64,000 nt of DNA, taken from Haliotis rufescens (lineage: Eukaryota). Every line of letters begins with the position of its first letter. The first letter of the stretch is position 1. This document shows, in pieces, positions 7,896 through 38,300 of the stretch. Where the stretch lies: contig NW_025963791.1 of the NCBI RefSeq assembly GCF_023055435.1, positions 21,204,001 through 21,268,000 on the forward strand, read 5' to 3'. The notes under the pieces are model-generated. The model did not search any database. It had not been told where the DNA came from and saw nothing but the letters and a program-made list of their open reading frames with translations. The position numbers were made by a program, and so were the translations under genes.

Positions 7896-9319
7896 ATATC
7901 ACAGGTCTGTGTTAGCCATGAGTTCTGTACATCTTTGTATAATAGAACATGTATGTATATATTCCTATAACTCCTATCCATGTGTTTCTTCTAAATATTC
8001 ATATTGAGCAGTATTTACTGTTCGATATACTTCCAGGGATATCACAGGTCTGTGTTAGCCATGAGTTCTGTACATCTTTGTATAATAGAACATGTATGTA
8101 TATATTCCTATAACTCCTATCCATGTGTTTCTTCTAAATATTCATATTGAGCAGTATTTACTGTTGATATACTTCCAGGGATATCACAGGTCTGTGTTAG
8201 CCATGAGTTCTGTACATCTTTGTATAATAGAACATGTATGTATATATTCCTATAACTCCTATCCATGTGTTTCTTCTAAATATTCATATTGAGCAGTATT
8301 TACTGTTGATATACTTCCAGGGATATCACAGGTCTGTGTTAGCCATGAGTTCTGTACATCTTTGTATAATAGAACATGTATGTATATATTCCTATAACTC
8401 CTATCCATGTGTTTCTTCTAAATATTCATATTGAGCAGTATTTACTGTTGATATACTTCCAGGGATATCACAGGTCTGTGTTAGCCATGAGTTCTGTACA
8501 TCTTTGTATAATAGAACATGTATGTATATATTCCTATAACTCCTATCCATGTGTTTCTTCTAAATATTCATATTGAGCAGTATTTACTGTTCGATATACT
8601 TCCAGGGATATCATAGGTCTGTGTTAGCCATGAGTTCTGTACATCTTTGTATAATAGAACATGTATGTATATATTCCTATAACTCCTATCCATGTGTTTC
8701 TTCTAAATATTCATATTGAGCAGTATTTACTGTTCGATATACTTCCAGGGATATCATAGGTCTGTGTTAGCCATGAGTTCTGTACATCTTTGTATAATAG
8801 AACATGTATGTATATATTCCTATAACTCCTATCCATGTGTTTCTTCTAAATATTCATATTGAGCAGTATTTACTGTTCGATATACTTCCAGGGATATCAT
8901 AGGTCTGTGTTAGCCATGAGTTCTGTACATCTTTGTATAATAGAACATGTATGTATATATTCCTATAACTCCTATCCATGTGTTTCTTCTAAATATTCAT
9001 ATTGAGCAGTATTTACTGTTCGATATACTTCCAGGGATATCACAGGTCTGTGTTAGCCATGAGTTCTGTACATCTTTGTATAATAGAACATGTATGTATA
9101 TATTCCTATAACTCCTATCCATGTGTTTCTTCTAAATATTCATATTGAGCAGTATTTACTGTTCGATATACTTCCAGGGATATCACAGGTCTGTGTTAGC
9201 CATGAGTTCTGTACACCTTTGTATAATAGAACATGTATGTATATATTCCTATAACTCCTATCCATGTGTTTCTTCTAAATATTCATATTCAGCAGTATTT
9301 ACTGTTGATATACTTCCAC
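7896..9319. repeat. Tandem repeat, 142-143-bp unit, about 10 near-identical copies
   Basis: Unit begins ATATCACAGGTCTGTGTTAGCCATGAG. Confidence 0.95.
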
Positions 9320-14300: not shown

Positions 14301-17300
14301 TCTTCTGGCACTGTCAGTGTACAAGAGCAGGAGGACTACAAGAAGGGAAAGGGTCTCTTTGCCTCACAAGGATTGCCCAATTTGTAAACCTAAATACACG
14401 TTCACATGAAATAGAATGAGACTTGCATGTTATAGTCTGATAATGATACAAAATACACAGGTGAGGCTTAATGGGGGAAACATGGTAGAGTATTTTCAAT
14501 GAAGTTTTATTCTGCAGAAACTGATTTTTATTTGTCATCAAACTTTGTAAACCCCTAATGTTTCCAAGATGATCCCCTCCAAAACTTATCGAGAACATTT
14601 TAGATTCAAATCTTCAAAAAATGGTTCCTCGCAATGCGTACACATTCATGAAATAAACATGATTTTTAACATTTTGATTTTATCATTTGCCTTGAAAAAC
14701 AGTTTGTTCTTGACCCTGTAGTATAGCATATTGTTATTGTCTTCATCATTCTTAAAATCAAAATGCCATACACAGATATAATTTGTAAAATCAAATCAAA
14801 AGAGTGAAACAGAACTTATGGCAGGTTCAATAAATACACAGAAAAAAATGAATTGACAGACAATTTAATACCCCCTCATAGTCAAACATCAGTGATCCAT
14901 GAACACAATACAGTAAATGATGAAGTTAATGCGAGCAAGAAATTAATGCAAGCACTGCTCGCATTAATAACGTGACACATTTATATGTGGACATATTGGA
15001 TTTGCCACGCCACATTCACTGCACATGCTGGGCACAATCACATTAAAAAGCTCCCATAAGTATAAAAAAAAAAATGCCAGAGAATAATCGATCTCAATTA
15101 TCTGTCGAATTGATTCGTAAAAGGCAAAAATCACAGTGTAAACAAAATGACTGGATCACTGGAAACCAGTGATGACACCAGGTGTTTGCAAAAAGGGTAA
15201 GCATGTCCTGTCCTATATGTAGCCCCTGGAAAGTGTAAACAATGTCATTGAAAGCTAATTAATTAATAAATAATGTCATCAAGAGCTTGATCGGGGTAGA
15301 GATAGGAAGTGCTACTCCCATTCATCTCATGACCAATTTTAGGCTAGGGGTTGGCACTCCCATTCATTTCATGCCCAATTTTAGGATGGGGGTTGGCACT
15401 CCCATTAATTTCATGACCAATTTTAGGCTAGGGGTTGGCACTCCCATTCATTTCATGACCAATTTTAGGCTAGGGGTTGGCACTCCCATTCATTTCATGA
15501 CCAATTTTAGGGCAGGGGTTGGCACTCCCCTTCATTTGGTTAAGCACTAATTTCATGATTTACAATTTTGCTGTGAGTTCAAACTACAACATTTTGAATC
15601 TTGTGCCAGACAGACTCGTGAAGGAAGAAAACACAAACCCACTTCTAGTTTGGTCTTTGATTCAGGCTTGTCAGTCTCATCTTGCTGTTCCTCCTCAGCA
15701 GTTGTCTCCTCTTTGTCCTCTCCTCTCTCCAGTTCTTCCTCCACATCACTGTCCTCCCGAGGCGTAGAGGTCGTTGAGGTTTTCTTGGGGGCCTCCGTCC
15801 CCTCAGTGTTGGATTCATCTGTTAACATGCAATCTACATCAGATGTTCTCCAGTTATGTCCCCTCTAAGCCTCTCTCATGACCAATGAGACTCCACCTCT
15901 CATATCATTTGCGTTTGCTTCACCCAAAATGGTTGCGCCCAGTCAGGGCGATCTGATCGATAATCAAGATCTATATTGTGATAAAAAGGGTCTTACATCG
16001 CGAAATGCATCAAATCACGTGAGCACCTTGATTAAAAACATGAAAAGATTTGGAAAATATCTGCTGACATCGAGTTGGCGGTGCACATGCTTTGCAAATC
16101 CTGCAATTGACCGAAATCTGCACGACAGTTTTGGAACCGGATTTGGATTTCTGTGCCCGATTTTGATTGGACTATGCATGGACTCGTTAGTCCAGCCAAA
16201 ATGTAACTCCATAATACCAGCCTAGTTCGACAAGGGTGGAAACTGGACTTTTATAGTCAGTTAACTCACTTGCCTCGGGAAGATGCACGTCACTATATAA
16301 GTGCAGTAATTATTGGCGCAATGATAACCCTATTTCACCTCACCCTACCCTCTAATAATCAATTTACTGTGGATTTATCCAAAAACATCACCATTGAGTC
16401 AACAACTGTACATCAAAAGAGTGGATTAAAATTATAGCTCTTGTGGTAGTGACTGCTCATACAGTTTCGCTTTTAGTCCATGTCTCTTGAAGTGAATGTC
16501 CACTATGGACGGTTTCATAACAAGTGACATCTTGACGCAAAAAGCAATTAATTCCCAAATAACAAAAATGCTGGAGTAATAAGCTGATTATCACAGCTCT
16601 AGGTTAATTACCTTTCTCTTCATCATCCATGTTGAAAGGTGTCTTCGGGTGGGCCCATGTGGAGGCATCGTTCAGATCCCATGGGAATTTCTATGTGGGT
16701 AATAGAGAAGTCAAGAGTTACCTCCCTTCTCTTAGAATTTCAATTGACATTTTCAATTGTTGTTCATAAGTTTTTGTAGCCTTGCCATAATGATTGAACT
16801 GTGCCATTGATACTGTGATACAAGTTTTTTTGTTTGTTTGTTTTTTAATGCCGCAGTCAGCAATATTCCAGCTATATGATGGTGGTCTGTAAATAATCAT
16901 GTCTGGACCAGACAATTCTGTGATTGACATCATGAGTATCGATCTACGCAATTGGGACATGATGACATGATATTTTGATGATTTTCATATCAATACATGG
17001 GCATCTAGTTCTAGTGTTGGGTGATCTTTCTTTGCACCCATATTACTAATGTAAATTGGTAAATAATTGAAACTTAGCCAGCATGTAATAATATTAAGTG
17101 CACATATAGAGCAAAAGAGGCTATAATGTAGGGCTGGGCTGGTTAGTAAATGGATACCCAGGTACCCTGGACTGTATCATTATTCCCTGACCCTGGGGTA
17201 TCTATGAACAAAGTGGGCTGTATGACTGTACATGGTTTCTAGTTTGGCCCTAGACCAGGTCTTAACAGTCAGTTTAAACCAGTCTGGTATATTCAAAACT

Positions 17301-20300
17301 TTTTGAATGAAAAACAAAGTCTAACCAACCAATATAAGTTGAAAAATATAAACCTACCATGGGGGTATTTTAACAATGGTTTAAGTGTTTGTGTCACATT
17401 TCTTCATCATTGAAATTTGCTAACAATCTGTATAGGCCTATGTAATATTTTGCTGATTGCAAAAATAATTAAATGAAACAAAGTCACACAGGTACACACA
17501 CCGAACATGTTACCTTTATCACCAATCATAATATTTTTTGGTTGGTTGAAAGATAAAACAATAAAATAAAAATGTCAACAGTGCACTTGTTCAAGAACGT
17601 TTTGACTGCAGATGCATTATTTCGTTTGTTATAATTTAGGTCACGTGACCATGGGTCGGGGTAGTTGAAACAGGACCCAGGTAGAGGATATAGGAGAACC
17701 AACCCAGGTTATCAGGACATACACCTGTCTCCCACTGCAATCATGTCCGGCAGGGAATACACCAGTGGTCTACAAACACCTGGCATTTCCAAATTGACAG
17801 TCTAAGAGGCTCAGCACTTGGAGCTTGTAGAAACGTCTCCTACCTGACCGAAGGTCCCTACGTAGTAGCCCTCCATTGTCCAGAGGCGGGCAGTCTTGTC
17901 AGTGGAGGCACTGAGGATGAAGCCCCGGCTATCGTGTTCCAGGTACTCCACACTGACCACTGCTGCATCATGGGCCTTGAATGCTGCTTCCAGGGGCGGC
18001 CGTGTCCTGACTCGCTGTGGATGGCAGGGAGACTGGTGAGGGGCGTGGATCAATGTACAGGTCGACCACAGAATTGTCACACATGCATTCAACGTGGATA
18101 AAATGTCCTCCAACATATAAATATCAAACACCAGTCAGTCTTTTCCTAACAATCTTCATCGACAATTAGATAAACCTTTGCTCAGAAATGAATGTATGTT
18201 TTAACACCATACTCAAATGTCTAGTGTATGCTTTGACACCATACTTACATGTACAGTGTATGTTTTAACACCATACTCATATGTCTAGTGTATGTTTTGA
18301 CACCATACTCACATGTCCAGTGTATGTTTTAACACCATACTCACATGTCTAGTGTATGTTTTGACACCATACTCACATGTCTAGTGTATGTTTTGACACC
18401 ATACTCACATGTCTAGTGTCTTTTTTGACACCATACTCACATGTCTAGTGTATGTTTTAACACCATACTCATATGTCCAGTGTATGTTTTGACACCATAC
18501 TCACATGTCCAGTGTATGTTTTGACACCATACTCACATGTCTAGTGTATGTTTTGACACCATACTCACATGTCTAGTGTCTTTTTTGACACCATACTCAC
18601 ATGTCTAGTGTATGTTTTAACACCATACTCACATGTCCAGTGTATGTTTTGACACCATACTCACATGTCCAGTGTATGTTTTGACACCATACTCACATGT
18701 CTAGTGTATGTTTTGACACCATACTCACATGTCTAGTGTATGTTTTAACACCAAAATCACATGTCCAGTGTATGTTTTGACACCATACTCACATGTCCAG
18801 TGTATGTTTTGACACCATACTCATATGTCTAGTGTATGTTTTAACACCATACTCACATATCCAGTGTATGTTTTGACACCATACTCACATGTCTAGTGTA
18901 TGTTTTGACACCATACTCACATGTCCAGTGTATGTTCTTACACCATACTCACATGTCAAGTGTATGTTTTGACACCATACTCACATGTCTAGTGTATGTT
19001 TTGACACCATTCTCACATGTCCAGTGTATGTTTTGACACCATTCTCACATGTCCAGTGTATGTTTTGACACCATTCTCACATGTCCAGTGTATGTTTTAA
19101 CACCATACTCACATGTCTAGTGTATGTTTTGACACCATTCTCACATGTCCAGTGTATGTTTTGACACCATGCTCACATGACCAGTGTATGTTTTGACACC
19201 ATTCTCACATGTCCAGTGTATGTTTTGACACCATTCTCACATGTCCAGTGTATGTTTTAACACCATACTCACATGTCTAGTGTATGTTTTGACACCATTC
19301 TCACATGTCCAGTGTATGTTTTGACACCATTCTCACATGTCCAGTGTATGTTTTGACACCATTCTCACATGTCTAGTGTATGTTTTGACACCATTCTCAC
19401 ATGTCCAGTGTATGTTTTAACACCATACTCACATGTCTAGTGTATGTTTTGACACCATGCTCACATGTCTAGTGTATGTTTTGACACCATGCTCACATGA
19501 CCAGTGTATGTTTTGACACCATTCTCACATGTCCAGTGTATGTTTTGACACCATTCTCACATGTCCAGTGTATGTTTTAACACCATACTCACATGTCTAG
19601 TGTATGTTTTGACACCATTCTCACATGTCCAGTGTATGTTTTGACACCATTCTCACATGTCCAGTGTATGTTTTGACACCATACGCACATTTCGAGTGTA
19701 TATTTTGTCACTGTACTCACATGTCTAGTGTCTGGCATGACACAGTACCTACAAGTGTGGGGTCTGGCTTGACACAGTACTTACATGTCTCCGGTCTGGC
19801 TTGACACAGTACTTACGTGTCTTGGGTCTGGCTTAACACAGTACTTACATGTCTCGGGTCTAGCTTGACACAGTACTTACATGTCTCGGGTCTAGCTTGA
19901 CACAATACTTACATGTCTTGGGTCTGGCTTGACACAGTACTTACATGTCTCGGGTCTGGCTTGACACAGTAGTCCGAGGTGTCCCACACCTTGATATTCC
20001 CGGCTGTATCCCCTGTAATCACGGCTGTGTTCCTTGGTTTTGAACACATGGCTAACACGGAGTCATCCACACTGTCTGTTGCACTGAAGAAACCTGGAGA
20101 AGAAGAAGAGCAGTTTCTGCTGAAGGGCCATCGCAGGTATGTCCAGTAGTGGCTGTAGCGGCCATCTTTCAAAATGGCAACCACGGCGACTAATAGTTAT
20201 CAAGCTACAACAAGTCAATCTGATGCAGATTAAATACCATTTCTCTATTCATTTGGAACAATACTTTCAGTCGACCTCAATCACACCGGGATTTTCACTG

Positions 20301-23300
20301 TAAAACGATGAAGATCAAACAAGCGAATACATAATAAACGGGACATTATTTTCTCTTTTCTTATCAAATGAAACATTTATCTCATGGAGTGATAGAGTCT
20401 CCTTTGTCAGCCGTTGTCAGCCATTGTCACAAGATGAGATAAATATGTTACATGACAGAACAGACAAATATGCTCGATATAAAGTCATCAACAGTTACTA
20501 CTGCACCTAGCTCTGATTTCGGGGTGTAGATATTCCACCAATGAAGCACCCCCCCTTCACTGGACACCACCACGGCACTCTCCGTGAACCTGATGGCAGC
20601 CCGGTCTCGCAGGAACATCACCTTGTCCACTGGAACCGGCTCACTGGACACACAAACAAGAACAGACCCAGATGTAGGGCAGTAAACATCATCGTACACT
20701 TTTACTCTGAACATCTCAACTTGTCTGCAGCGTCATGCATAGCCTTCATAAATCATTGTAAAGTAGGATGGCAAGGCTGGACTTGACAGTGCAGGAACAG
20801 GGCCGGAACAAGGGTGTCACCCTTATATGGAAGCAGATCGATTATGGGGGATGCATATTTCAGTTAAGTACAGGATGACTTTGACTCCATGACCTTCGGT
20901 AAAAGTCAATCAGCTGTAATTTGTTTGTTGTTTACTGCAGCAGTAGGCAATATTCCAACTATATGACAACAGCCTGAAAATAATGGAGTCTAGACCAGAC
21001 AAACCTATGATTAATATTATAAGCAATGATCCACACCATTGATATGCTATCAATCACATTGCTGGGCCTGACCATCCAAGCCATTCATATGCCTCATGAG
21101 ACAAGCAAAGGTTTATTTGGGCCAATTTGAACCTGGAATCCCCACAATGGCAGCTGTATTGGGAAAACAACTCTGAGCATGACATCTATTTTGTACTGAA
21201 ACAAAAATTGAGGGAACACACACAGACACACACACACAGACGCACGCACGCACACACAGAAACACNNNNNNNNNNNNNNNNNNNNNNNNNNNNNNNNNNN
21301 NNNNNNNNNNNNNNNNNNNNNNNNNNNNNNNNNNNNNNNNNNNNNNNNNNNNNNNNNNNNNNNNNNNNNNNNNNNNNNNNNNNNNNNNNNNNNNNNNNNN
21401 NNNNNNNNNNNNNNNNNNNNNNNNNNNNNNNNNNNNNNNNNNNNNNNNNNNNNNNNNNNNNNNNNNNNNNNNNATTTGTGCAAGGAGCAGCATCCCCCCT
21501 TCTAACTTCCATGTCCTTCCTACAGTTATTGATCATGTATCATCAGTAAACATGAGCTGCTTCATTTACCCTTTCTGGACTCGATGCTTTTTCTTGTGCC
21601 TAGAATTAGGTCGTTCATTTTTCAAAGAAGCTGTTAAATCTTCTATTTTCCTATTTCTGCAATGGAAATAAAAGTACATATTACAGACCTGGATGTAAGG
21701 TATCAGCACCATCACTTTCACTCTAAACATCTCAACTTGTCTGCAGCATCACGCATCACCTTCATAAATCATTTTAAAGTAGGATGGCTTGACAAAAGAA
21801 TCTCTTAGAGGATGTAAAAAAAATTCAGCAGACAAAAAACATTTATCTACAAAGGTGACAAAAAAAAGAAGAAGATTTTTCCCTGTCACTTACAAATTTG
21901 TTTGTTGTCCTTTCCGTAGTCTTATAAACATTTTTTCTGTTTCCAAATCCCATACAATAATTTCCCCATCAAATCCTGCTGTTGCAACAAAGTTCGGTGG
22001 GCAGAAGTCGATGGAGAGAATGTCATCTTTGTGGAGTTGTCCCCCTTTCCAGTCTTGGTTGGCAGTGATGTACATGTTCTGGAACACCACAAAGTACCAT
22101 TGCATGTTCATATTCTGTTCTGACAGGTTTCATGCTTGCCGTAAAAGGCGACTAGCGGGATAGGGTGGTCAGGCTCGCTGACTTGGTTGATGCATGTCAT
22201 CGATCCCAATTGCGTGGATCGATACCTAAGATGTCAATCACTGGATTTATCTGGTCCAGACTCGATTATTTACAGACCGACGTCATATAGCTGGAATATT
22301 GCTGAGTGCAGCGTAAAAGAACCAACCAACCAGCCATCTGACAGGTTTGTTTGTTATGACTTTATTACTTAGCAATATGGCAGCGGCCAGTGAATAATTG
22401 AGTCTGGACCAGACAATCCAGTGATTGATATTATGAACAACGTCCCACGCAACAGGACACGCAATAAGCCAGGTCACCAACCATGACCACCTGATCTAAG
22501 TTGCCTCTTACGAGAGTCACAGGTTGCTTGGGACCAAGCCAGAGAAGAGATGGTCATGTCATGATAATACTACCTAAAGGTGACTTACAAAGTACAGCAG
22601 AGTACAACAAAGAAATAATAGTATCGTTGGATTATAGATTTTCGGACATCATATGTTTTTGGACGGCCATGGTTATCGCGATTACTCGCGCTATAATTAG
22701 GGGTGTGGTGTCACACAGACACTGTAAATACTTAAATGATGACCTGTTTTTAAAATAAAGTCGTCTTTAAGATGTCAGTGAGATGTTTTACAGCTATTCT
22801 TGTAATTAAAAAGAAAATTACAAATGTTTCTTAAGAGTCCGAAAGTGAAAATAACTTTCTCAAGGGCTACAATGCTCCAGAGTATTTGCTAAAATACACA
22901 ATCACCATAGCACAATTAATTTTGTATTTCTTGCATACAACTATGCATTTAACATTTTAAAAACCAATAGCCATACAACTGAATGTAGCTGTTTCAGCCT
23001 GTATACACTATGTCTTTACAGATCTTTATTTACATATTGAATGCAGGTATAATGTATCCATGACCTATAGTGCAGTGAATAACGTACACAAGTACCTCTT
23101 GCTTACTGTAACTGATGGTTCTGTCCCTGTGTACTCACGTCCTGGTCTGAGTCGTCGTAGATGGTGAGCAGTCTGCTCCAACCCACTGACAGGATCATCT
23201 TCTTGTCCCGGACTGGCAGGATCCCGGTGACCTCGGCCTCTGCTGCAGCCTCCAGCTTGTGCAGGTTATGGCCATTCTGGAAGTTCCAGACCTACAACAT

Positions 23301-26300
23301 GACAAGGCAGGTGCTTGTAGGTGAGTGAGTGAGTGAGTGAGTGAGTGAGTGAGTGAGTGAGTGAGTGAGTGAGTGAGTGAGTGAGTGAGTGAGTGAGTGA
23401 GTTCCATGCCTACAACATGACAAGGCAGGTGCTTGTAGGTGATTGAGTGAGTAAGATTTGAAGCAGGATACAGTGCTGAAAGCCATGAGCATGGGTATGG
23501 TGCTAGCAAACCTAGAAACCTAATGAGTACAAACTGGGATTCGAACCCATGCTCATAAGATTCATTAATGCCTAAGGGATGCAACTCTGCATGCCCCAGG
23601 TGCATGCAGGGCTTATTTCATATCATGAGTTGAGTTTCAATCAGACAACTTGACTGTTCTTAAATTCCTGATGTCTACAAAAAGGAAAATGGAATAATGC
23701 TGTTACATACAACTGGTGGAATTTCATTAGTTGTCGTATGCATCACCCAAAATTACACTTACGTCCATAGAAATATTATATTCTATGCTATTATAGTAAT
23801 GCTATTTTTCAGGCCATTATCATTTGCAGAAGCCCGAGGTCTTCCATTAACTGCCCGACAAAGGAGTGCGGTTGAAAAGACCGAGGGCTTCTGCAAATGA
23901 TAATGCCCCGAAAAATAGCATTACCGTTATTATAGCTAAAAATGGATTGAATTTGTTATCAGATAAAAAGAAATAACAATATCGATTTTGAAATATTTAC
24001 TGTAATCAACACGAATGTCACTGACCCACTTTTACAAAAATGGAAACGTCAGAGAACAAATCAGATAACATCACTATTGAACGTGATGTCACCTATCCCT
24101 ATCCTATGACATCACCTAACAACGGGCGTGATAATGGCCCATCATCAAGCAATATGAGGGAATTATCAAGTTACAGAGGCCCGCTCATTTCTGATTAAAT
24201 GCAGGCAGTTTTATGATAATTCCATCAATTTTAGCTCTAATACTCTTTAAGTTGTTTAGGTGTGACCTTTGGAGGTTATAAGTGCCAACAAGAATAAGAT
24301 CTCTTAATCAATCTTCATTTCAAACTTCCAGCTAGATAGATGAAAAGAATTTAGATAGTTTGTCCTTATCCTCATTGCCATCGATAATATCCATTACAAG
24401 TTCTGAATCCTGAGGTTTATTTATATACTACTCTACTTTCGACAGGGATATTTACAACTTTCCATATACACAAAACTGATTCTCATATGTCAAGTATATA
24501 TTTCAATAGAATGACAACCTGATTATCCCTTTCAAACATTGAGTAGTACAGGAAGCATGTTCGTATGGTCATCATTTCAATGTGTTTGTGCAGATTACAT
24601 GTTTGATAATACATTTATCGCAGGCTTCATAAAATATACATTTCCAAAAGGTATTTTTGTCCCCAAAACTGTGATTCATAAGTTATTGTAACCTTGCCAT
24701 AATGATTGAACTGTGCTATTGATACTGTAATACAAACTATTTTCTTTTTTTTTGTTTTGTTTGTTGTTAACGCTGCACTCAGCTATATGACGGCGGTCTG
24801 TGTAAATAATCGAGTCTGGACCAGACAATCCAGTGATTGATATCATGAGCATCAATACACGCAATTGGGATCAATGACATACATCAACCAAGTCAGCGAG
24901 CCAGACCACCCGATCCTGTTAGTCACCTTTTACGTCAAGCATAGTCGCCTTTTACAGCAAGCATGGGTTGCTGAAGACCTATTCTACTCCGGATCTTCAC
25001 GGGTCGTAATACAAGTAATCTGGAACCTGACATCATGGAGGTTATATGTAGATTAGTTCAATCTCATTAAAATCAGGTCTTAGTGCATTGCAGGTCATGT
25101 CAGAATGACATTTCGGGAACCCTGACCGACCAATGAAATGACTAACAAGAAATCTACATAAGCCAACCAGAAAGCAGTTTTCTCAAGTTTTACGACACTA
25201 GTGTCAGACAGACAACAGTCAATCCAGACAATGCTTTGACAAATATTTTGAAAAGTTCTCTATTCACAACCTGAAAACTGAACAAAAGAAAATTCGTGAA
25301 TGTCTAATAGATGGCAGTACTTCTCACTGGCTATGGAAAATCTCTTCAGTTTCAAATTTGTTCCCTGCGAGACAAATGATGATTTTGACGGAATTAGACG
25401 AACAGAATTAGACTTATTAGAATGTCATTGGGAATATGCAAGTTGTTCTGTCGTGACATGTAACAGGATGTCCTGAGATCTTTGTTTAGCAGCAGCAAGA
25501 ACAAAGATCTGATTTTTATGAGATTGAGATTAGTGTTGAGGATGCGCAAGTAGCCTGTTTGCAACACCCACCTTGATGGTGCCATTCCTGGCGCCGGTCA
25601 TGAGTCTCCTGTACGTCTCATCAAAGACCATGCAGGTGATCTCCTCGTCTCCATGGGCATTGGAGAACACAATAGACTTCCTGCCACTCTCAATGTCCCA
25701 GACAGCGATACAGGACGAGTCACAGCCGGTTACGACCTGTTGGAACACATACACACTTAATCTCAACACTGAGGAATGAAGACATATTTCCAATACACTT
25801 CTACCACAAGAGTAAACGCAAACACTAAATAGATGACACAAAGGATGAGGTAGGATGAAGGCTCTTTCATAATATTTTGGCCAGATTGAAATGTCAGATG
25901 ACAAATCAGATACATGTATGTTTAAATAGCTGACCACAAGCAATTTTCCTTTCTTAAAACTAGAACACATTTTGGACTTACAGCAGAACAATATTTGTAA
26001 GAATGGCCAAACTGAGAGAAAAAGGCCTAACCATGAGTCCATGACACAAGATTATTTTTTTCACCATATATGAAAGATTATTCTGAGAAAATCAGCATCC
26101 TAAAAAAAGGCCTTTTAAGTTTTAACACATTTAATTTTTACTCATACATTTAGACAAAAGTCCAGTATATAAAGTGTTGCCATTAACAAAGAACTCATCC
26201 ATATGATCACATCTGTTAAATTTCATAACGATTTCTACAAGTTTAGATCATTTCTCAAATTATGCAGATCTTTTAGGCCAAAGGCAAGATGGGACCAAAC

Positions 26301-29300
26301 TACTATACCTGTGGCACTACTTATATACCAAACCTAGGTACCAGGTATCAGTAGACAAACATTACATGTTTCCTGATTTGCGGGTGTTATTGAGTAGTAT
26401 TTGATGCCTGGACATTCCATATGGAACTGACATTGTTAGCCAGAGGTTTCAAATGTTAAATTTCAATAAGCCACATGTAAGTGCATATGTACCTGTTTGA
26501 AGAAGTGGTTGTAAATGGCACAACACAGCTGTGTATCATGTGTGGTGGGCATTACGCTCTGTGGTGCTGCCACCTGCCCAAGCTTCAGCATGCCGATGTA
26601 GTCGTTGCTGGTAACGAGCACTGCGCTGTGTGGCGCCCCCTGCAAGTGGAGAGGGAACTGACCGTGTTCTGGCATCCGTCCGTGGATGCTGCTAGGGAAC
26701 TTGAGTTGCACCGTTTGAAGACAAGTGTGTTCTCGGATGTCCCACACCTTTATCACCTATAGGAGAAAACATGCCCTGTGTAAAGTGATGTCCAATACCG
26801 TTATCACCTATAGGAGAAAACATGCTCTGTGTAAAGTGATGTCCCATACCGTTATCACCTATAGGAGAAAACATGCCCTGTGTAAAGTGATGTCCCATAC
26901 CGTTATCACCTATAGGAGAAAACATGCCCTGTGTAAAGTGATGTCACACGCTGTTATCACCTTCAGGAGAAAACATGCCCCTTGTAAAGTGATGTCACAC
27001 ACTGTTATCACCTATAGGAGAAAACATGCCCCTCGCAAAGTGATGTCACACACTGTTATCACCTACAGGAGAAAACATGCCCTTTGTAAATTGATGTCAC
27101 ATGCTTTATCACCTATAGGAGAAAACATGCCCCTTGTAAAGTGATGTCCCATACTGTTATCACCTACAGGAGAAAACATGCCCCTTGTAAAGTGATGTTC
27201 AACACTTTTATCACCTATAGAAGAAACTTGCCACTTAAAAAGTAATGTTCCACACCTTTATCGCGTATAGAAGAAACTTGCCACTTAAAATGTGATGTTC
27301 CACACTTTTATCGCCTATAGAAGAAACTTGCCCCTTAAAAAGTAATGTTCCACATCTTTATCGCCTATAGAAGAAACTTGCCACTTAAAAAGTAATGTTC
27401 CACATCTTTATCGCCTATAGACGAAATTTGCCACTTAAAAAGTAATGTTCCACACCTTTATCGCCTATAGAAGAAACTTGCCACTTAAAAAGTGATGTTC
27501 CACACCTTTATCGCCTATAGAAGAAACTTGCCACTTAAAAAGTGATGTACCACATCTTTATCGCCTATAGAAGAAACTTGCCACTAAAAAAAAGTAATGT
27601 TCCACATCTTTATCGCCTATAGAAGAAACTTGCCCCTTAAAAAGTGATGTTCAACACCTTTATCGCCTATAGAAGAAACTTGCCCCTTAAAAAGTAATGT
27701 TCCACATCTTTATCGCCTATAGAAGAAACTTGCCACTTAAAAAGTAATGTTCCACATCTTTATCGCCTATAGACGAAATTTGCCACTTAAAAAGTAATGT
27801 TCCACACCTTTATCGCCTATAGAAGAAACTTGCCACTTAAAAAGTGATGTTCCACACCTTTATCGCCTATAGAAGAAACTTGCCACTAACAAAGTGATGT
27901 TCTACACCTTTATTGCATATAGAAGAAACTTGCCCCTTAAAAAGTGATGTTCCACATCTTTATCACCTATAGAAGAAACTTGCCCCTTAAAAAGTGATAT
28001 TCAACACCTTTATCGCCTATAGAAGAAACTAGCCACTTAAAAAGTGATGTTTCACACCTTTATCACCTATAGAAGAAACTAGCCCCTTAAAAAGTGATGT
28101 TCAACACCTTTATCGCCTATAGAAGAAACTAGCCCCTTAAAAAGTGATGTTCCACACCTTTATCACCTATAGAAGAAATTTGCCACTTAAAAAGTGATGT
28201 TCCACATCTTTATCGCCTATAGAAGAAACTTGCCACTTAAAAAGTGATGTTCCACACCTTTATCACCTATAGAAGAAATTTGCCACTTAAAAAGTAATGT
28301 TCCACACCTTTATCGCCTATAGAAGAAACTAGCCCCTTAAAAAGTGATGTTCCACATCTTTATCGCCTATAGAAGAAACTTGCCACTTAAAAAGTAATGT
28401 TCCACACCTTTATTGCATATAGAAGAAACTTGCCCCTTATAATGTGATGTTCCACATCTTTATCGCCTGTAGGAGATTTCTTATAATCATGTATATGCTT
28501 TTGCTGCTTTCATTTACTGCAGGCATTCCAGGTATCAGTGGGAGTATTCTTTTCAAGAGATTATCAGTAACCTCATTCAAGTCAACCCTAACAAAATATT
28601 ATTAGCATAGACCAAACATATCTATAAAAGAAATAGTTAATTTTATTTCAAACAATCTTATTTCATTCCAATACATTTTGCATATGTAATAAAACCCTTC
28701 AGTTATTCATTTCAGTAACAGCAGAAACAAAAACATTTACAAAAAATATGAATAAATCCTAATGCAACAGTCACTCTAAAAGCCATGCACTGCTACAAAA
28801 TAAAAATGATACGATACTTACTTGTCACCCATTGTCCCTACAACCTAGCCGTGTTCACACTACCCAAACAATGGCAGCTGTATCTGTCTTGATGCAGACA
28901 ACTCATTTAGGCCGCTCAGATATTCTAATTGCAGCATTGCAGCAGTAAGTTGTCTGACAAGACTGTTTAGATATCGGTATCAGATTTTGTCATGGTGATA
29001 CGAAATAAGAAGAGATGAACTAGACAAAACAAAGCTGATCGACAGGTGACCTTGTGACATGACCTGGGTTACGACATAAAATGACACAAAAGTTAGTCAC
29101 AATATTTGTAAGAATACACACAACCAATGGCATGTGTTTGGAATGCTATGCTATACACTATAATGAGTGAGTATGGTTTTACGCCGATTTTTGAGCAATG
29201 TTCCAGCAATATCATGGTAGGGGACACCAGAAATAGGCTTCACACATTGTACCCATTTTGGGAATCCAACCCGGGTCTTTGGCGTGACGAGCGAACGCTT

Positions 29301-32300: not shown

Positions 32301-35300
32301 GACCAGTTTCGTTGCATGAGACACAGTTACTGAATGTGGATAGCACACTGGCTCAAACTTTACACGTTGCAAATGAATAGCCTGCCATTCATGGTGACAC
32401 ATCCTGGTTACTTCCATGTGCCAATGAATGTCACAACCACATGATTCATTGACTGGGTACAAAAAAGGAAAATGCCTCCTAGAGTGTACATGACAGCAGT
32501 GTCTAATATTCCCAAGATTTCAGTCAGACAACCAGCCTGCAAAGTTACCAGACCAAATAAGATATTGCCAGTCCAGATTTTTCTAGACAAATGGACAAAA
32601 GTAACAAAAGGGTAAACATAAGAATAGTACTGTTAAATGTAAGTTCTCAGAAAATAACAATCAACTGGTGGATTGTCAACTTAGTAACTTCATCTGATTG
32701 AAATTTTATCCATCAATTATGTGTTAACGTTTACACTTAATTTACCTCTTACATTGAACTAAAACTAGAAGGCAAAATAGGTCATTTAGGGAATACAATA
32801 GTAGCCCGACCATCTTGTATGTAACTTTTCAAAACTGACCATCCGTCTACAAAATAGACCATCTCGGACTGTAGGGCAGGCGGGTATTTTAAACATTGAT
32901 GACAGAAAAAGAAAAAAATGTGCGCAATACACATGATTGAAGCTGGCCAATCACAGAATGCAGTTGTCAGACACTTAGGTAAATCTAAAAGCGTGATATC
33001 CCAAATGATGGAATGATATCGGCAAACAGGTGGTGTAGGATTAATGTGGGTAGAGGAAGGCCTTGAAAGACTCCCCAGGCAGGACTGATATAGGTGCACC
33101 AGTGTGTTGATGAACAGGTTCATTTCTGCACAAGAACTGAGGGACAACTTGAGGCCTGCCACCGGAATCCGACTTTCCAATGCTAAAAAATGGTTGAACT
33201 GAGCTTGCGTCAGAACTTTGAGTTCCAGGATGACAATGCATGTTCTCACAGAGCTCGTGTTTCAGTTGACTGTGTGAGGCAGCAAGGTGTCACACCATTA
33301 CCCCTGCCAGCCAAATCTCCAGACAGGTCACCGATTGAACACCTTTGGGATGTTCGGGGCTGAAGGGTTCGGAACCGACCTCAGTGTTACCAGAACTTGA
33401 AACAGTGTGGACAGGCCTTACAAGAAGAATGGCGACCACGGGAGACAATCCAGCATTTGATATCCAGTATGCCGAGAAGTTAACATGCCTCCATTAATGG
33501 TCATGGAGCACTGACCAGACATGGACTTTACAAGAAGATTGAATTCCACATCATTACTTTACATGTCACTTCTGAATAAGTTTTGGGGTTACCTTAAATA
33601 TTGTTCCTTGTGTATACACTTGGTGTGATGGTGCAGGTCCTATGACCTGGGTTGACCAAGTGGTTGTATATACATATCCATCTTCCTGAGGCAAGAGAAT
33701 TAACTGACTTTAAAAGACCAGTTCCGAACTAGGCTGGAATTCCTGGGCTCAATCATAGCGCCACCAATGGCTATTACATGTTATATCCCATCTAAGCCTC
33801 TCCTATGGACCAATCATATTCCACCTCCCATATCACTTGCATTTGCTTCAAACAAAATGGCGGCGCCCAGTCAAGACGATCTGATCAAAACTCAAGATCT
33901 ATATTGTGATAAAACGGGTCTTACATCGCGAAGTGCATCAAACCACTTGAGCACCTTGATTAAAAACATGAAAAGATTTGTAAAATATCTGTTGACAACA
34001 ATTTGGCGGTACATATGCTTTGCAAATCCTGCAATCGATCAAAATCTGCACGACAGTTTACTATCCGGATTTCAATTTCGATGCGCGATTTTGATTGGAC
34101 TATGCATAGACTCGTTAGGCCAGCCAAAACTCCAAAATACCAGCCTAGTTCGGCAAGGGTGGAAACTGGACTTTAATAGTCAGTTAACTCCCTTGCCTCG
34201 GGAAGATGATCCATATCAGAAGAGTGCAAACAATTTCATTTCATACAATGTTTTACTTTTACAAGTTTATTACACCTTGAAATGTGTTTACCTGCATGAA
34301 TATCTTCTGAACTCCCCCTTCACTCTGGAAGGGGGTCTCGAACAGCTGTGTGATGGGTTTGTTGAAGTAGAGGAGGTTGATGTCCCCGGAGTCCACACCG
34401 AAGGCAAGCAGGGACCGATTGTTGGGGTTCTGGGGGCATGAGTGCACATCATTATGTTGGGGCTGAACCTTCTGGCATATTGTACATGTCTCGGACAGGG
34501 AAGCAACACATTGATTAGGCCTTCTTTGGATTTGTTGGTTTACATATTTGTTTCTCCAACTGTGGGTCAGGGTTGAAATAAAATACAAATATATTAACAC
34601 CTTCACTTATGGTTTTGGTTTGTAAAGAAGTCAGGTCTGCAGAGAAAAAGAATAATGATTTTCCAACTTGCTATTATGTCGCATGTATCACTTGTCGGCC
34701 AGGCAGGGAAACAATTTTAGATTATTCTATTTTCTTAAGAGTGACTATCTGGCTTTGGGGTAATAAAAACTGAAATTTTCCCTCCACATTTCTGATTCTT
34801 AGGGTCTGCAGGTCTGTAAACCAAGATTTTTAAAAATGCCATATGTAGAATATGTAGTTATTGTTAGGCTACAAAAAAAAGTTTTTGCTTCTCTCACAAA
34901 TTTGTTTCAACATCAACAGATGTTTTTTATCCATGCGTCAGACTTTTCGTTAAAAAGAAAGAAAGAAAATCTCTTATGTTCCGTCTTAGATGAAATTCTC
35001 ATGATTGGAAAACAGGATGTTTCAAAAACCTATATCTACTGAAGAAGAAATGAATTATGTCTGATACATACAAATAATGATCCTAATCTTTTCAAAAGCC
35101 TTTTTCTCTATGATAGCCAGCTAGTTGGGATAATAAAAGGCTCAAATCAGACAATTTTGAGCTAATACGTGAAATAACTAACGAGTAGGTGTTCCTGTCT
35201 ATAAAGACATCCTACCTTCTGGTCATACCAGTAGTCAAAGCAGTAGGGTACATCAGTCATTGCTGGAACAGAGAGACATGCAGATGCAAGCTTCAGGTGA

Positions 35301-38300
35301 ACGATACTGTAGGGAAGTACTACATGTATATCAATACACTGATGTGTTGCTGGGTATGTGCAGGAAAAATCATGTCACATAACATTACGACTGTCGTAAG
35401 TCTGTGTTTAACTATGGGAGTTGCGACAGTCGCTTTGTGAAACAGGGCCAAGGTACCTCATTTCATCAACGAATAAATCATCGTTCAAATCAGACGTTTT
35501 TTGCTTGTTGTTCCTCCCAGTACAGGTGCGGGTCGTTCAAGTACACGAGCATGATATTCCAACAAATACACTACACTACTGATAGTGACAATCGATGAAA
35601 TTATAACTAATAAAGTATGGTACGCTCACTTCTGACACTGCTGTCTGTATAGTTTCAGCTGTAACATGTAAAGGCATAGACCCGTGTAGATCCAGGGTAG
35701 CATAGGTCTTCTGAAAATCATGCTTGCGTAAAAGGTGACTATGCTTGTCGTAAGAGGCGACTAACGGGATCGGGTGATCAGGCTCACTGACTTTGTTGAT
35801 GCATGTCATAATATCCTATTATATAAATCGATGCTCAAGATGTCAGTCACTGGTTTGTCTGATCCAGACTTGATTATTTACAGTCCGCCTGGAATATTGC
35901 TGAGTGCGGCGTTAAAAAACAAACAAATAAACAAAATATAGGCATAAATTTGTTACCAGTACCTACCAAACAAATGGAATTCTTCAAAATACTGGGTGGT
36001 GGAAACATCATAGAAGCGGATGTCTCGACTGGTAGATCCGATGGCAATCTTATGACAGTTGGGCATGTAGACGACATCTGTGATCCACATCTTGAAGCGA
36101 CGCTTCTGACCTATTGTCTCTGTGGTGTCGTCCTCGATGACATAATTCCTCTCATACGAAATGTTGGAGTTCCACACACTCATACCCCCTTCCTGCAGAA
36201 CAGGAAGTATACAACCTTACAGTGGGATCGGGTGTGCTTGGGGCCAGCGTTAATTTGCTGAGCAGAGTTGCATCCCTTAGGGGTGCCAGGAACCTATGAT
36301 AATAGGTTCGAATCCCAGATTCACTCTAGGTTTGTCAGTACCAATTATATTCGGCCTTGGTGTAAACCTGCATTATATCTGGCCTTCCTCCTAAATTTAG
36401 CTAACAAGGCGTTAGAAATTGGCACTTGTCCTATAGTCCTTGCCAATTGCCCAATCGTTAAGGTATCATCAAGACTAGTTGAAATTAGCCATTTTAAGGG
36501 ATTTGCTACATGTTATCATTAGTGAACATATTAAAACATGTTACTTTCTATCACTGTAGCACGCTGTGACATAACTGAAATACTGTCCAAATCACATAAA
36601 ACTCAACTCATTCATTCACTGTTCAAAACAGTGTTAAACTTCACTCTCTCTCACTCACTCGAGATCACTGCAGTGGTGTCAAGTCAAAAGATGACATGAG
36701 GTAAAAGTATTTTGTGCAGAATTTTTGCTCAGTGTACATTACCAGCATGATCAGGCAAATCAGGGACTCATTTCACTGATTTCAAAGTAATTACCTTCTA
36801 TTTTATACATTCCAACAGATATTTAATGGTTATTTGCCAGACAGAGTTCACAGAGCACAAGTAGGCAGGACCAAGATAATGAAAGGTCGGTTATTGAAAA
36901 AACATGATGCCATGAATCAGGTTCAACTTATGTGCAAAGAATGACAACAAAAATATTCATTATAAAACATCAACACCAGACAACAATCAGACTCTATTGT
37001 CTGCGATTACACCTACCTTACTTATTGTTAAATATCGGGTAGGGTTTTCAACAGATATGATCTTGGTAGTAGTTTCTTGCTGCAAATAAAGATATCTTGT
37101 GATAATACGACAAAATATATAACACTGGAATTAAATGTACCTCATATTGACTACAATAAAGTACATCCTGGATTGTCCAAGAGAAGTTCTACACCAGCTG
37201 ACTGATCAGACATAGAGGATATTATACTCGTGTTCATGACCATGTTTACGACACTCGTATCATAATGGGGAATCATAATGGATTTGGTGATCAGGCTTCA
37301 GTGACTTGTGTCAAAATATGTCCCCAGTATGTCCCCAGCAACCTAAGCTTGTCATAAGGTGAGGTGAGGTGAGGTGAAATTGGGTTTAACGTCGCGTCAA
37401 AGATTATTGCACTTATATAGCAACGTGCATGCACGTGTGTGTGTGTGTGGCTGCTTGTACTAGTCCGGACTGATGCCGATTTATAGTGCTAGCACACTGA
37501 GATACCATGCCGCATTTTAACATGAATACCCCACTCAGACACAGTATACAGACTCCGAGCCGACCAGTCCTTGTTTTAGCCCCTTAATGCCAAGCGCCAG
37601 ACAGGGTAACAACAAGTACCATCTTTTAACGTCTTTAGGGATTGAACCCCAGACCTTCCGCTCTCCGGGCAGACGCTCTACCACTAGACCACGGAGGCGG
37701 TCCTTGTCATAAGGGGAATCATGATGGACTTGTTGGTCAGGCTCGGTGACTTGGTTTAATGCATGTCATCGTGAATTGTCTGGCCCAGATATCATCATTT
37801 ACAGGCCACCATCATATAACTGGAATACTGCTGAGTGTGGTATGAAATAACAAACAAACCAACGTTCCATGTTCTCACCCTGTTGTGTACGGCATGTCTG
37901 ATCTTGGGCTCCACAAGGAAGGGGATTTCCTTCTTGGTGCGGAGGTAGTCGTTCTCCCGGTACAGCAGCAGGAGATAAGTGCAGAACTCATCCCAGTCCA
38001 CGTACCCGTCACACGACGTGTCGAGCTAAACACAAAAAACATGGCAACTACAACATCCATTGAGGATCATATATTATGGTAACACATACTGTCAAATGAC
38101 GTGTCAAGCTGAACACAAAATACATGGCATCCATTGAGGATCCTATACTGTGGTAACTTGTAGGGGTGTTTATTGAAGGCAACCATTGCAATTGTGGTAC
38201 AACCACTGTTATATACTCTCCACTTTTGACAGGGATATATTTATCTTTCCATGGTAAATAAAACAGATTCTCATATGTCAAGTGTATGATTAAACATCAT

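What the first reader, a model, noticed from the sequence alone, without database searches (positions are those of the whole stretch)
18193..19971. 1.8-kb array of about 55 5'-splice-site decoys grown from the end of exon 16
Seen: the last 26 nt of the exon plus GTAAGT form a 32-nt unit. About 7 near-identical copies follow the exon, then about 48 copies of a diverged 32-nt variant (ATGGTGTCAAAACATACACTAGACAT|GTGAGT). The middle of the unit diverged, but the donor went from GTAAGT to GTGAGT, still a consensus U1 site. The array fills about 90% of this intron. Use of the next donor shifts the frame, and read-through meets TAA (..QDM*). Inference: retention of the donor consensus may reflect U1 loading (telescripting or decoy function), or simply chance in the founder variant.
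Basis: partly seen in the sequence, partly recalled or inferred. Interest (0 to 1): 0.8.

Follow-up and report, generated by a model that had tools for sequence, protein, structure and literature searches.

The report
Intron minisatellite copied from a splice donor
One intron of a red abalone cilia gene consists almost entirely of 55 tandem copies of the preceding exon's end plus its splice donor, a repeat type already known from several human genes and most likely neutral rather than a regulatory device.

Summary
On the minus strand, 56 in-register 32-nt units without indels run from the last 25 nt of exon 16 (20093..19945) through 91% of a 1,930-nt intron. The gene is the CFAP337/WDY-like gene of Haliotis rufescens.

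- **Origin:** the exon tail ...YCVKPDPRH is identical in four Haliotis species, so the array was copied from the exon, not the reverse.
- **Two unit families:** the proximal and distal consensus share 23 of 32 positions in register, and a hybrid unit joins them.
- **Uniqueness:** the distal unit occurs nowhere else in the 1.33-Gb genome; 47 of 47 pattern matches lie here.
- **No protection of donors:** 30 of 55 copies keep GTRAGT and 47 keep GTRAG. Hexamer positions vary more than the rest (23/276 against 43/1196). Retention by chance has P of about 0.13-0.15. The intron has no AATAAA or ATTAAA.

I read it as a neutral, junction-seeded minisatellite. This kind is described in human F7, IFI6, CBS, LMNB2 and PDGFA (PMC1557585).

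No RNA could be laid on the exon. Annotated proteins use the first donor. The scan noted the same thing on other DNA of this genome. In my own random 200 kb, 2 of 25 arrays are of this type.

The parts
19945..20093 (-). Exon 16 of the CFAP337/WDY-like gene (149 nt), ending ...NIKVWDTSDYCVKPDPRH in phase 0
   Evidence: tblastn of orthologs. It is identical to H. rufescens XP_048248360.1 over this exon. The acceptor ttctccag|GT was read.
19939..19944 (-). Authentic donor GTAAGT (context CAT|GTAAGTA), the only donor that keeps the reading frame
   Evidence: Sequence. Annotated proteins of four Haliotis species join ...DPRH to RVRT.... Every later donor gives a premature stop.
19938..19969 (-). 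Unit 0: the last 25 nt of the exon plus 7 nt of intron, the template of the array
   Evidence: Register analysis. TRF places the array end at 19971.
19714..19937 (-). Proximal units 1-7. Units 1-6 match unit 0 at 28-31 of 32 positions (GTAAGT x5, GTAGGT x1). Unit 7 is a hybrid with an exon-like 5' half, a distal-like 3' half and GTGAGT.
19682..19713 (-). Unit 8, a degenerate transition unit (GTGCGT)
18210..19681 (-). Distal units 9-54 (46 units, mean pairwise identity 0.933) with multi-unit higher-order repeats. Donors: GTGAGT 23, GTGAGA 14, GTGAGC 3, ATGAGT 3, and TTGAGT, GTGATT and GTAAGT once each.
   Evidence: The 160-nt spacing of the best self-matches shows the higher-order repeats.
18178..18209 (-). 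Unit 55, a partial last unit. The array ends at about 18193.
18015..18192 (-). Unique tail of the intron with the acceptor ...ccatccacag|CGAGTC. It is roughly what the intron would be without the array.
   Evidence: Sequence and tblastn boundaries.
17844..18014 (-). Exon 17 (171 nt), RVRTRPPLEAAFKAHD...GTFGQ, a WD40 repeat
   Evidence: Pfam WD40 E = 0.00019, below the gathering score.

Best explanation
This is a locally born intronic minisatellite. It was seeded by a tandem duplication of a 32-nt segment straddling the exon 16-intron boundary of the red abalone CFAP337/WDY-like gene, and it then grew by slippage or unequal exchange.

History (inferred). An early copy diverged. One diverged unit, and blocks of several units, were amplified recently to about 46 copies. 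A second, younger set of 6-7 units stays close to the exon. The array enlarged an intron of roughly 180 nt to 1,930 nt.

Splicing (inferred from the reading frame, from annotation and from the human precedent). The first, exon-adjacent donor is used. It emerges first during transcription and pairs with the acceptor across a 149-nt exon. The later copies are silent pseudo-donors, or they yield frame-shifted transcripts with premature stops that would be degraded.

The donor motif persists because it was part of the copied unit and the copies are young, not because it is selected.
For: 1. Structure: 56 in-register units without indels.
2. Common origin of the two families. The consensus sequences share 23 of 32 positions in the array's own register (binomial 5e-8). 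The best of the other 31 rotations gives 14 matches. Unit 7 is a hybrid: 15 of 16 proximal-like in its 5' half and 15 of 16 distal-like in its 3' half.
3. Direction of copying. YCVKPDPRH|RVRT is identical in H. rufescens, H. cracherodii, H. asinina and H. rubra. The linker has the same length in Gigantopelta, Patella, scallops and more distant orthologs.
4. Local birth. All 47 of 47 matches to a distal 29-mer with up to 3 mismatches lie in this intron, with 0 for the reversed control. The proximal query matches only here.
5. No constraint on the donors. Hexamer mismatches are 23/276 against 43/1196 elsewhere (odds ratio 2.4, p = 0.0018, in the direction of more change). For GTGAG they are 6/230 against 60/1242 (p = 0.16). 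Variable positions are 4 of 6 against 10 of 26. G+1 is lost in 4 of 46 distal units. The chance of keeping GTRAGT given 9 changes in 32 positions is 0.13-0.15.
6. Only donor 0 keeps the frame. All 8 annotated H. rufescens isoforms and the proteins of 3 other Haliotis species use it.
7. Turnover. In run X15 (organism G; about 97% alike on the contig laid across exon 16) a 737-nt contig stops at 19944. Proximal-type units have summed depths of 215-1217 against 19.6 for single-copy flanks, while the distal-type bin 19650-19695 has depth 0.
8. Precedent. In human F7 the pseudo-donors of such an array are functional but only the most upstream one is used (PMC1557585: abstract, introduction and discussion read).
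9. Recurrence. Arrays of the same build occur elsewhere in this gene and in a random sample of the genome.
Against: - No transcript data could be laid on exon 16 or its donors. Which donors are used is therefore inferred, not shown.
- The annotated proteins are computer models, and I could not inspect their RNA support.
- 31 decoys have predicted U1 pairing as strong as the real donor (-6.5 to -7.5 kcal/mol; real donor type -6.9 to -7.4). In some experimental systems strong downstream donors do compete (recalled). The F7 paper itself reports that perfect-consensus pseudo-sites shift splicing.
- The 12-nt block GACATGTRAGTA has only 1 of the 9 differences between the families (P = 0.06, block chosen after seeing the data). 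This is a weak hint of uneven conservation.
- Junction-seeded arrays look somewhat commoner than random seeding predicts, and pure neutrality does not explain that.
- No indexed run holds half or more of the stretch's words. The distal array is therefore unconfirmed outside this assembly.
Confidence: 0.75

Rival explanations
1. The array is a selected device. Dozens of U1-binding sites at 32-nt spacing would load U1 snRNP on the nascent intron. They could protect it from premature cleavage and polyadenylation, reinforce the weak real donor (T at -1), or act as decoys that divert a regulated share of transcripts into frame-shifted, degraded products.
For: - 30 of 55 copies keep GTRAGT and 47 keep GTRAG.
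- 31 decoys pair with the U1 5' end as well as the real donor.
- The only hexamer change between the two families is A to G at +3, which keeps the consensus.
- Every decoy donor gives a premature stop, which a regulated decay switch would require.
- Donor-bearing arrays are over-represented in a random sample: 5 of 25 against 1.49 expected, P = 0.018.
Against: - Hexamer positions vary more than the others, and G+1 is lost in 4 of 46 distal units.
- Retention of the consensus in the founder has a chance probability of 0.13-0.15.
- The 1.9-kb intron has no AATAAA or ATTAAA to be suppressed.
- Unit composition differs sharply in run X15.
- The four control hexamers gave 3, 1, 0 and 3 of 25, so the enrichment is modest.
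- None of the 8 annotated isoforms differs at this junction.
Confidence: 0.1
2. The copying ran the other way. A pre-existing intronic minisatellite supplied a new donor, and the last 25 nt of exon 16 are an exonised array unit.
For: The exon tail and the units are nearly identical (31 of 32 for unit 1). The encoded linker is poorly conserved outside gastropods.
Against: - The tail YCVKPDPRH followed by RVRT is identical in four Haliotis species.
- A linker of the same length (within one residue) with the YC start is present in Gigantopelta, Patella and scallops.
- Units far from the exon are the diverged ones.
Confidence: 0.03
3. The distal 32-mer is an unrelated satellite or mobile-element repeat that happens to abut a small exon-derived array.
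For: A 28-nt array on another contig (C556, about 2.99 Mb) shares a 15-nt core with the distal unit. It was hit at 73-74% identity.
Against: - 47 of 47 pattern matches are in this intron.
- The C556 array has a different period (28 against 32) and shares only the core.
- The two families keep one register, share 23 of 32 positions (next-best rotation 14), and are bridged by a hybrid unit.
- The tool warns that common words and simple repeats are skipped, so absence elsewhere is a lower bound.
Confidence: 0.03

Closest known systems
Human F7 intron 7: 37-bp VNTR whose first monomer spans the exon 7-intron 7 boundary (Borensztajn et al. 2006, PMC1557585; abstract, introduction and discussion read)
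   Same: It is a minisatellite whose first unit contains the exon end and the donor, so the real donor is followed by identical pseudo-donors. Only the most upstream site preserves normal expression. The pseudo-sites are intrinsically functional but silent.
   Different: - F7 has 5-9 units of 37 bp with 4 exonic nt and a weak donor (TGG|GTGGGT). Here there are 55 copies of 32 nt with 25 exonic nt, a near-consensus donor and two diverged unit families.
- Donor usage is shown by experiment in F7 and is only inferred here.
- The host here is a mollusc.
Human LMNB2 repeated element (de Stanchina et al. 1997; seen only as a title in the reference list and one sentence of PMC1557585)
   Same: [quoted passage not shown] Only the authentic donor is used. 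This is the same architecture as here, where the array fills 91% of the intron.
   Different: It has a 100-bp monomer in 10-15 copies. I did not see the paper itself.
Human IFI6 (6-16) intron 2 minisatellite with 25 pseudo-donors, the CBS intron 13 31-bp VNTR and the PDGFA intron 4 array (as summarised in PMC1557585)
   Same: These are arrays seeded on a donor junction with up to 25 reiterated donors. [quoted passage not shown] That predicts minor +32 and +64 nt products here.
   Different: Copy number here is about twice that of the largest of them. The extra products here would all carry premature stops. The original papers were not seen.
U1 telescripting, and decoy 5' splice sites as regulatory elements
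   Same: A transcript region dense in U1-complementary sites.
   Different: Telescripting concerns the suppression of cryptic polyadenylation signals, mainly in long introns. This 1.9-kb intron has no AATAAA or ATTAAA, and the sites are not conserved above background.
Intron origin from tandem arrays or tandem duplication (Zhuo et al. 2007, title seen only in a reference list, and the paper is not held; Lehmann et al. 2010, PMC2891723, search listing only)
   Same: Tandem copies that carry splice signals reshape intron-exon structure.
   Different: Here no new intron arises. An existing intron is enlarged about tenfold by copies of its own 5' junction.

Membership tests
Junction-spanning intronic minisatellite with reiterated pseudo-donors (F7 IVS7 type) | Tandem array inside an intron whose first monomer spans the exon-intron boundary | tested here: met
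   Unit 0 is 25 exonic nt plus 7 intronic nt. Units 1-6 match it at 28-31 of 32 positions. All 56 units are in register.
Junction-spanning intronic minisatellite with reiterated pseudo-donors (F7 IVS7 type) | The donor sequence is reiterated in the following monomers | tested here: met
   Of 55 copies, 30 are GTRAGT, 47 are GTRAG and 50 keep GT.
Junction-spanning intronic minisatellite with reiterated pseudo-donors (F7 IVS7 type) | Only the most upstream donor (or the first few) is used in vivo | not testable with these tools
   No RNA contig or read covered exon 16. Indirect support: only donor 0 keeps the frame, and the annotated proteins of 4 Haliotis species use it.
Junction-spanning intronic minisatellite with reiterated pseudo-donors (F7 IVS7 type) | Copy number or composition varies between individuals or close relatives (VNTR behaviour) | tested here: inconclusive
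   Run X15 shows high summed depth on proximal-type units and none on the distal-type bin. However, the depths are sums over contigs, not copy numbers, and the organism is coded.
Selected U1-loading, telescripting or decoy element | U1-binding positions conserved above the rest of the unit | tested here: not met
   Mismatches are 23/276 in the hexamer against 43/1196 elsewhere. For GTGAG they are 6/230 against 60/1242 (p = 0.16). Variable positions are 4 of 6 against 10 of 26.
Selected U1-loading, telescripting or decoy element | Cryptic polyadenylation signals in the intron that need suppression | tested here: not met
   There is no AATAAA or ATTAAA on the sense strand of 18015-19944. Weaker variants were not scanned.
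Selected U1-loading, telescripting or decoy element | U1 snRNP occupancy and an effect on host transcript output | not testable with these tools
   This needs CLIP or antisense-capture data and a deletion experiment.
Genome-wide satellite or mobile-element repeat | The unit is present at many loci | tested here: not met
   47 of 47 pattern matches are at this locus. BLAST hits elsewhere are limited to 2 weak ones in a single 28-nt array.
Recursive splice sites | An acceptor AG directly abutting GTRAGT | tested here: not met
   The units read GACAT|GTRAGT, with no AG at positions -2 and -1.
Structured RNA family (snoRNA or miRNA cluster in the intron) | A match to a curated RNA model | tested here: not met
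   Rfam scan of 17000-21000 on both strands at E up to 1 gave 0 matches.

The most novel reading that the evidence does not exclude
In the red abalone genome, exon-intron junctions may be preferred seeds of minisatellites, so that introns commonly grow by copying their own splice sites. The evidence so far: at least 2 of 25 arrays in a random 200 kb, 2 of the 4 large arrays in this gene, and other windows noted by the scan. The cause could be a transcription- or splicing-linked mutation bias, or selection for extra U1 or U2AF binding. The resulting arrays of tens of intact donors could measurably titrate U1 or tune host-gene output through unproductive splicing.
Probability: 0.2. Interest if true: 0.6.

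Novelty: new member of a known kind. Interest (0 to 1): 0.35.

Why it matters
It is a natural and extreme test case for 5' splice-site choice. The intron carries 31 downstream donors predicted to pair with U1 as well as the real one. They sit 32 nt apart, and all are lethal to the reading frame. This is about twice the largest human example named in PMC1557585.

It also shows how one intron grew about tenfold by copying its own junction. Together with the mirror-image acceptor array upstream of exon 10, and with similar arrays elsewhere in the genome, it suggests that the 11% minisatellite content of my random 200-kb sample of this genome is partly built from splice junctions.

For annotation it is a warning. 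Such arrays offer gene predictors dozens of plausible but false donors.

It does not by itself reveal a new mechanism.

Tried and rejected
1. **RNA evidence.** The look-up of sequencing runs found no holder on record as RNA. Read laying on 19650-21000 with X1, X3, X4 and X15 gave only contigs, and none from a spliced transcript over exon 16. X1 has two 61-nt contigs that leave the genome at 20644, the 5' edge of exon 15. That looks like splicing but says nothing about exon 16. A search for short transcript-derived protein fragments across the junction returned 3 hits, none from Haliotis.
2. **Orthologous introns of other species.** Whether the array exists in H. cracherodii, H. asinina or H. 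rubra is untested.
3. **Genome-wide satellite.** Rejected.
4. **Exon tail recruited from the array.** Rejected.
5. **Structured RNA.** Rfam gave nothing.
6. **Decoys hidden by RNA structure.** In local folding, the real donor has the highest probability of an open 9-mer among the 55 sites scored (units 0-54): 0.048, against a distal mean of 0.006. All values are low, and the first unit is favoured simply by lying at the array's edge. I treat this as a weak hint in favour of first-donor use, not as evidence.
7. **Gene-wide junction duplication.** 5 of 34 junction segments have a nearby same-strand copy, against 13 of 200 control segments. I ran no significance test. The excess is modest.
8. **Larger genome sample.** The enrichment estimate rests on 25 arrays only.
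9. **Literature.** Searches for this locus, and for abalone minisatellites at splice sites, found nothing specific. A search for telescripting together with tandem repeats found nothing relevant among its listings. I opened no supplementary files. None seemed to bear on a claim here.
Full report
**What is there.**
Tandem Repeats Finder reports two abutting arrays of period 32. One is 18193-19731 (48.1 copies, 93% matches, no indels, score 2553). The other is 19705-19971 (8.3 copies, 88% matches, score 408). Read on the minus strand and cut in a single register, they form 56 consecutive 32-nt units from 19969 down to 18178 without any phase shift.

- Unit 0 is the last 25 nt of an exon plus GTAAGTA.
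- Units 1-6 match it at 28-31 of 32 positions.
- Unit 7 is a hybrid and unit 8 is degenerate.
- Units 9-54 form a homogeneous distal family (mean pairwise identity 0.933). Unit 55 is partial.

The intron runs from 19944 to 18015 (1,930 nt), and the array fills 91% of it. About 180 nt of unique sequence with the acceptor remains. The number of intact sites is lower than 'about 55': of the 55 copies, 30 read GTRAGT, 47 GTRAG and 50 keep GT.

**Gene and organism.**
I searched the model exon by exon and never sent a joined model to a search tool. A profile-free search with the exon at 26493-26753 found full-length orthologs. Their sources name them cilia- and flagella-associated protein 337-like or WD repeat-containing protein on Y chromosome-like. 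tblastn places about 20 exons on the minus strand from 39585 to 11022.

The best match by far is Haliotis rufescens XP_048248360.1, which is 100% identical over many exons. The window's contig has exactly the length recorded for the contig that encodes that protein, 45,695,856 bases. The window is therefore red abalone.

Exon 16 is 20093..19945 and ends ...NIKVWDTSDYCVKPDPRH in phase 0. Exon 17 is 18014..17844 and starts RVRTRPPLEAAFKAHD.

**Which way the copying went.**
The exon tail and the start of the next exon read YCVKPDPRH|RVRT in all eight annotated H. rufescens isoforms and in H. cracherodii, H. asinina and H. rubra. Gigantopelta, Patella, scallops and more distant animals have a linker of the same length, within one residue, beginning YC or YA. 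The tail is therefore old coding sequence, and the array was copied from it.

The two unit families share 23 of 32 consensus positions in the array's own register. The binomial tail is 5e-8, and the best of the other 31 rotations gives 14. Unit 7 is proximal-like in its 5' half (15 of 16) and distal-like in its 3' half (15 of 16). They are one lineage, not two arrays that happen to touch.

**Uniqueness.**
In the 1.33-Gb assembly a distal 128-nt query hits this intron 14 times and one other place twice, at 73-74% identity. That other place is a 28-nt array sharing only a 15-nt core. The proximal query hits only here. A 29-nt distal pattern with up to three mismatches has 47 matches, all in this intron, and none for the reversed control. 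The tool warns that common words are skipped, so this is a lower bound. Even so, the 'genome-wide satellite' refutation fails.

**Are the donors protected?** They are not.
- Within the 46 distal units the six donor positions carry 23 mismatches in 276 cells, against 43 in 1196 elsewhere (odds ratio 2.4, p = 0.0018). They vary more, mostly at +6, where 14 units have A and 3 have C.
- The GTGAG core has 6 in 230 against 60 in 1242 (p = 0.16).
- Four of six hexamer positions are variable, against 10 of 26 others.
- The invariant G at +1 is lost in 4 of 46 units.
- Cells are not independent events, because blocks of units were amplified together. Counting variable positions avoids that problem and gives the same answer.
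- Between the families, 1 of the 9 differences falls in the hexamer (A to G at +3). With 9 changes placed at random in 32 positions, the chance that GTRAGT survives is 0.13-0.15.
- A block chosen after seeing the data, GACATGTRAGTA, has 1 of the 9 changes (P = 0.06). This is a weak hint at most.

**What decoy use would do.**
The next donor adds 32 nt and shifts the frame, with a stop in exon 17. Every later donor includes the TAA of ..QDM* (this was the one in-script join, used only to find stops).

Thirty-one decoys have predicted pairing to the U1 5' end of -6.5 to -7.5 kcal/mol. The real donor type has -6.9 to -7.4. The decoys are not intrinsically weak.

The intron contains no AATAAA or ATTAAA, so there is no obvious signal for telescripting to suppress.

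In local folding, the real donor has the most open 9-mer of the 55 sites scored (units 0-54): 0.048 against a distal mean of 0.006. This is an edge effect that fits first-donor use but proves little. Rfam finds nothing.

**Transcripts and variation.**
No indexed run is on record as RNA for this stretch. The second request, on 19650-21000, gave contigs only.

Run X15 (coded organism G) carries a 737-nt contig about 97% alike that ends at 19944, where the repeat begins. It shows summed depths of 215-1217 on most proximal-unit bins, against 19.6 on single-copy flanks. The distal-type bin 19650-19695 has depth 0. Depths summed over contigs are not copy numbers. The pattern nevertheless suggests that a relative or another individual has an array of proximal-type units and lacks the distal family, that is, rapid turnover.

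No indexed run held half or more of the stretch's words. The distal family is therefore unconfirmed outside this assembly.

**Context.**
The same gene carries a mirror-image array. About 35 units of 50 nt upstream of exon 10 each copy the polypyrimidine tract, TAG and the exon start (GTGATAAAGGTGTGG...). It too has an exon-like proximal family and a diverged distal one. Three further junctions have single nearby copies. In all, 5 of 34 junction segments have a nearby same-strand copy, against 13 of 200 control segments.

In twenty 10-kb stretches taken at round coordinates on two contigs, 11% of the bases lie in 25 arrays of period 12 or more. Five of the 25 unit consensus sequences contain GTRAGT, against 1.49 expected from shuffles (P = 0.018). 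The four control hexamers gave 3, 1, 0 and 3.

Two of the 25 arrays are plainly junction-seeded.
- L024 2241-3029 copies the end of an aldo-keto reductase exon plus GTAAGT (Pfam E = 1.5e-6, above the cut-off).
- L015 3093-3687 follows an open kinase-like exon (Pfam E = 0.0055, below the cut-off), and each of its units begins CAC|GTGAGT.

If donor junctions offered 0.6-3% of seeding sites, the chance of 2 or more in 25 would be 0.01-0.17. That percentage is my own assumption and comes from no call. The scan's earlier notes report the same phenomenon in two other windows of this genome and disagree on whether it exceeds chance. My small sample leans towards a modest excess.

**Known precedent.**
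Borensztajn et al. 2006 (PMC1557585; abstract, introduction and discussion read) describe the human F7 intron 7 VNTR, whose first 37-bp monomer spans the exon-intron boundary. They list IFI6 (25 pseudo-sites), CBS, LMNB2 and PDGFA as further cases. [quoted passage not shown] In F7 the pseudo-sites are functional, yet only the most upstream donor is used. Only perfect-consensus pseudo-sites shift the choice. In IFI6 and CBS the two nearest pseudo-sites are also used. The architecture here is therefore a known kind.

What is new is the host (a mollusc), the size (55 copies), the two-tier history and the company of a matching acceptor array.

**Verdict.**
This is a real, locally born, junction-seeded minisatellite that enlarged the intron about tenfold. 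Its donor motifs are inherited baggage, not conserved sites. Splicing most likely uses the first donor, as in F7, with at most minor unproductive use of the next one or two. A selected U1-related role is not excluded, but nothing measured here supports it.

The more interesting open question is why such arrays seem frequent at splice junctions in this genome.

Noticed in passing
window 26757-28476 (minus strand): About 35 units of 50 nt directly upstream of exon 10 each copy the polypyrimidine tract, TAG and the first bases of the exon (GTGATAAAGGTGTGG...). An exon-like proximal family and a diverged, homogenised distal family mirror the exon 16 array at a 3' splice site.
   Followed up: partly
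window 23282-23324 and 23400-23442; 38098-38129; 33618-33642: Single nearby same-strand copies of the acceptor junctions of the exons starting at 23291 (43 nt, 95%, flanking a (GTGA)n microsatellite), 38025 (32 nt, 91%) and 32211 (25 nt, 96%).
   Followed up: no
L024 2241-3029 (G000:C556:3002241-3003029, minus strand): A 74-nt x 10.9 array found in a random sample. Each unit copies the end of an aldo-keto reductase exon (..DLGLKYLDLYLMHWPVAYR) plus GTAAGT, giving 17 GTRAGT motifs (all read GTAAGT in the six rows printed). Pfam Aldo_ket_red E = 1.5e-6.
   Followed up: partly
L015 3093-3687 (G000:C13:6003093-6003687, plus strand): A 47-nt x 12.7 array that starts right after an open kinase-like reading frame. 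Each unit begins CAC|GTGAGT and repeats a diverged piece of the exon (GAGACTCCCCAA..). GTRAGT occurs 11 times in about 12.7 units.
   Followed up: partly
L031 772-4919 (G000:C556:45000772-45004919): A 30-nt x 140 array with GTGAGT in 112 of about 138 units. No open frame lies upstream, and the origin is unknown.
   Followed up: no
L013 1557-2079 (G000:C556:2990056-2990578): A 28-nt x 18.6 array sharing a 15-nt core with the distal unit of the exon 16 array. I judge the resemblance to be chance.
   Followed up: partly
window 20938-21000, and ORF-like copies at 16718-16960, 22187-22372, 24676-24864, 35774-35941, 42445-42621, 44029-44259: A dispersed repeat whose translation reads ..SGPDSIIYRPPSYSWNIAECG.. 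recurs in the gene's introns on both strands. It has very high summed depth in run X15 (6329 against 19.6). It is probably a short mobile element.
   Followed up: no
window about 21260-21490: A run of N (378 in the window) lies beside a weak match to residues 784-845 of the H. rufescens protein (21655-21488, 60% identity). Part of exon 14 seems to sit at or in the masked stretch.
   Followed up: no
window 7896-9318, 45075-46364, 50518-50870, 52327-53594: Four more large arrays (143 nt x 10 at 99% matches, 24 nt x 54, 26 nt x 13.6, 20 nt x 62) lie outside the mapped exons. I saw no relation to exon junctions, though flanking genes were not mapped.
   Followed up: no
window 20607-20644: Run X1 (coded organism A, guessed to be RNA) has two 61-nt contigs that match the first 38 nt of exon 15 and then continue for 23 letters that do not fit the genome. 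A spliced transcript would look like this. The loose letters were not searched.
   Followed up: no
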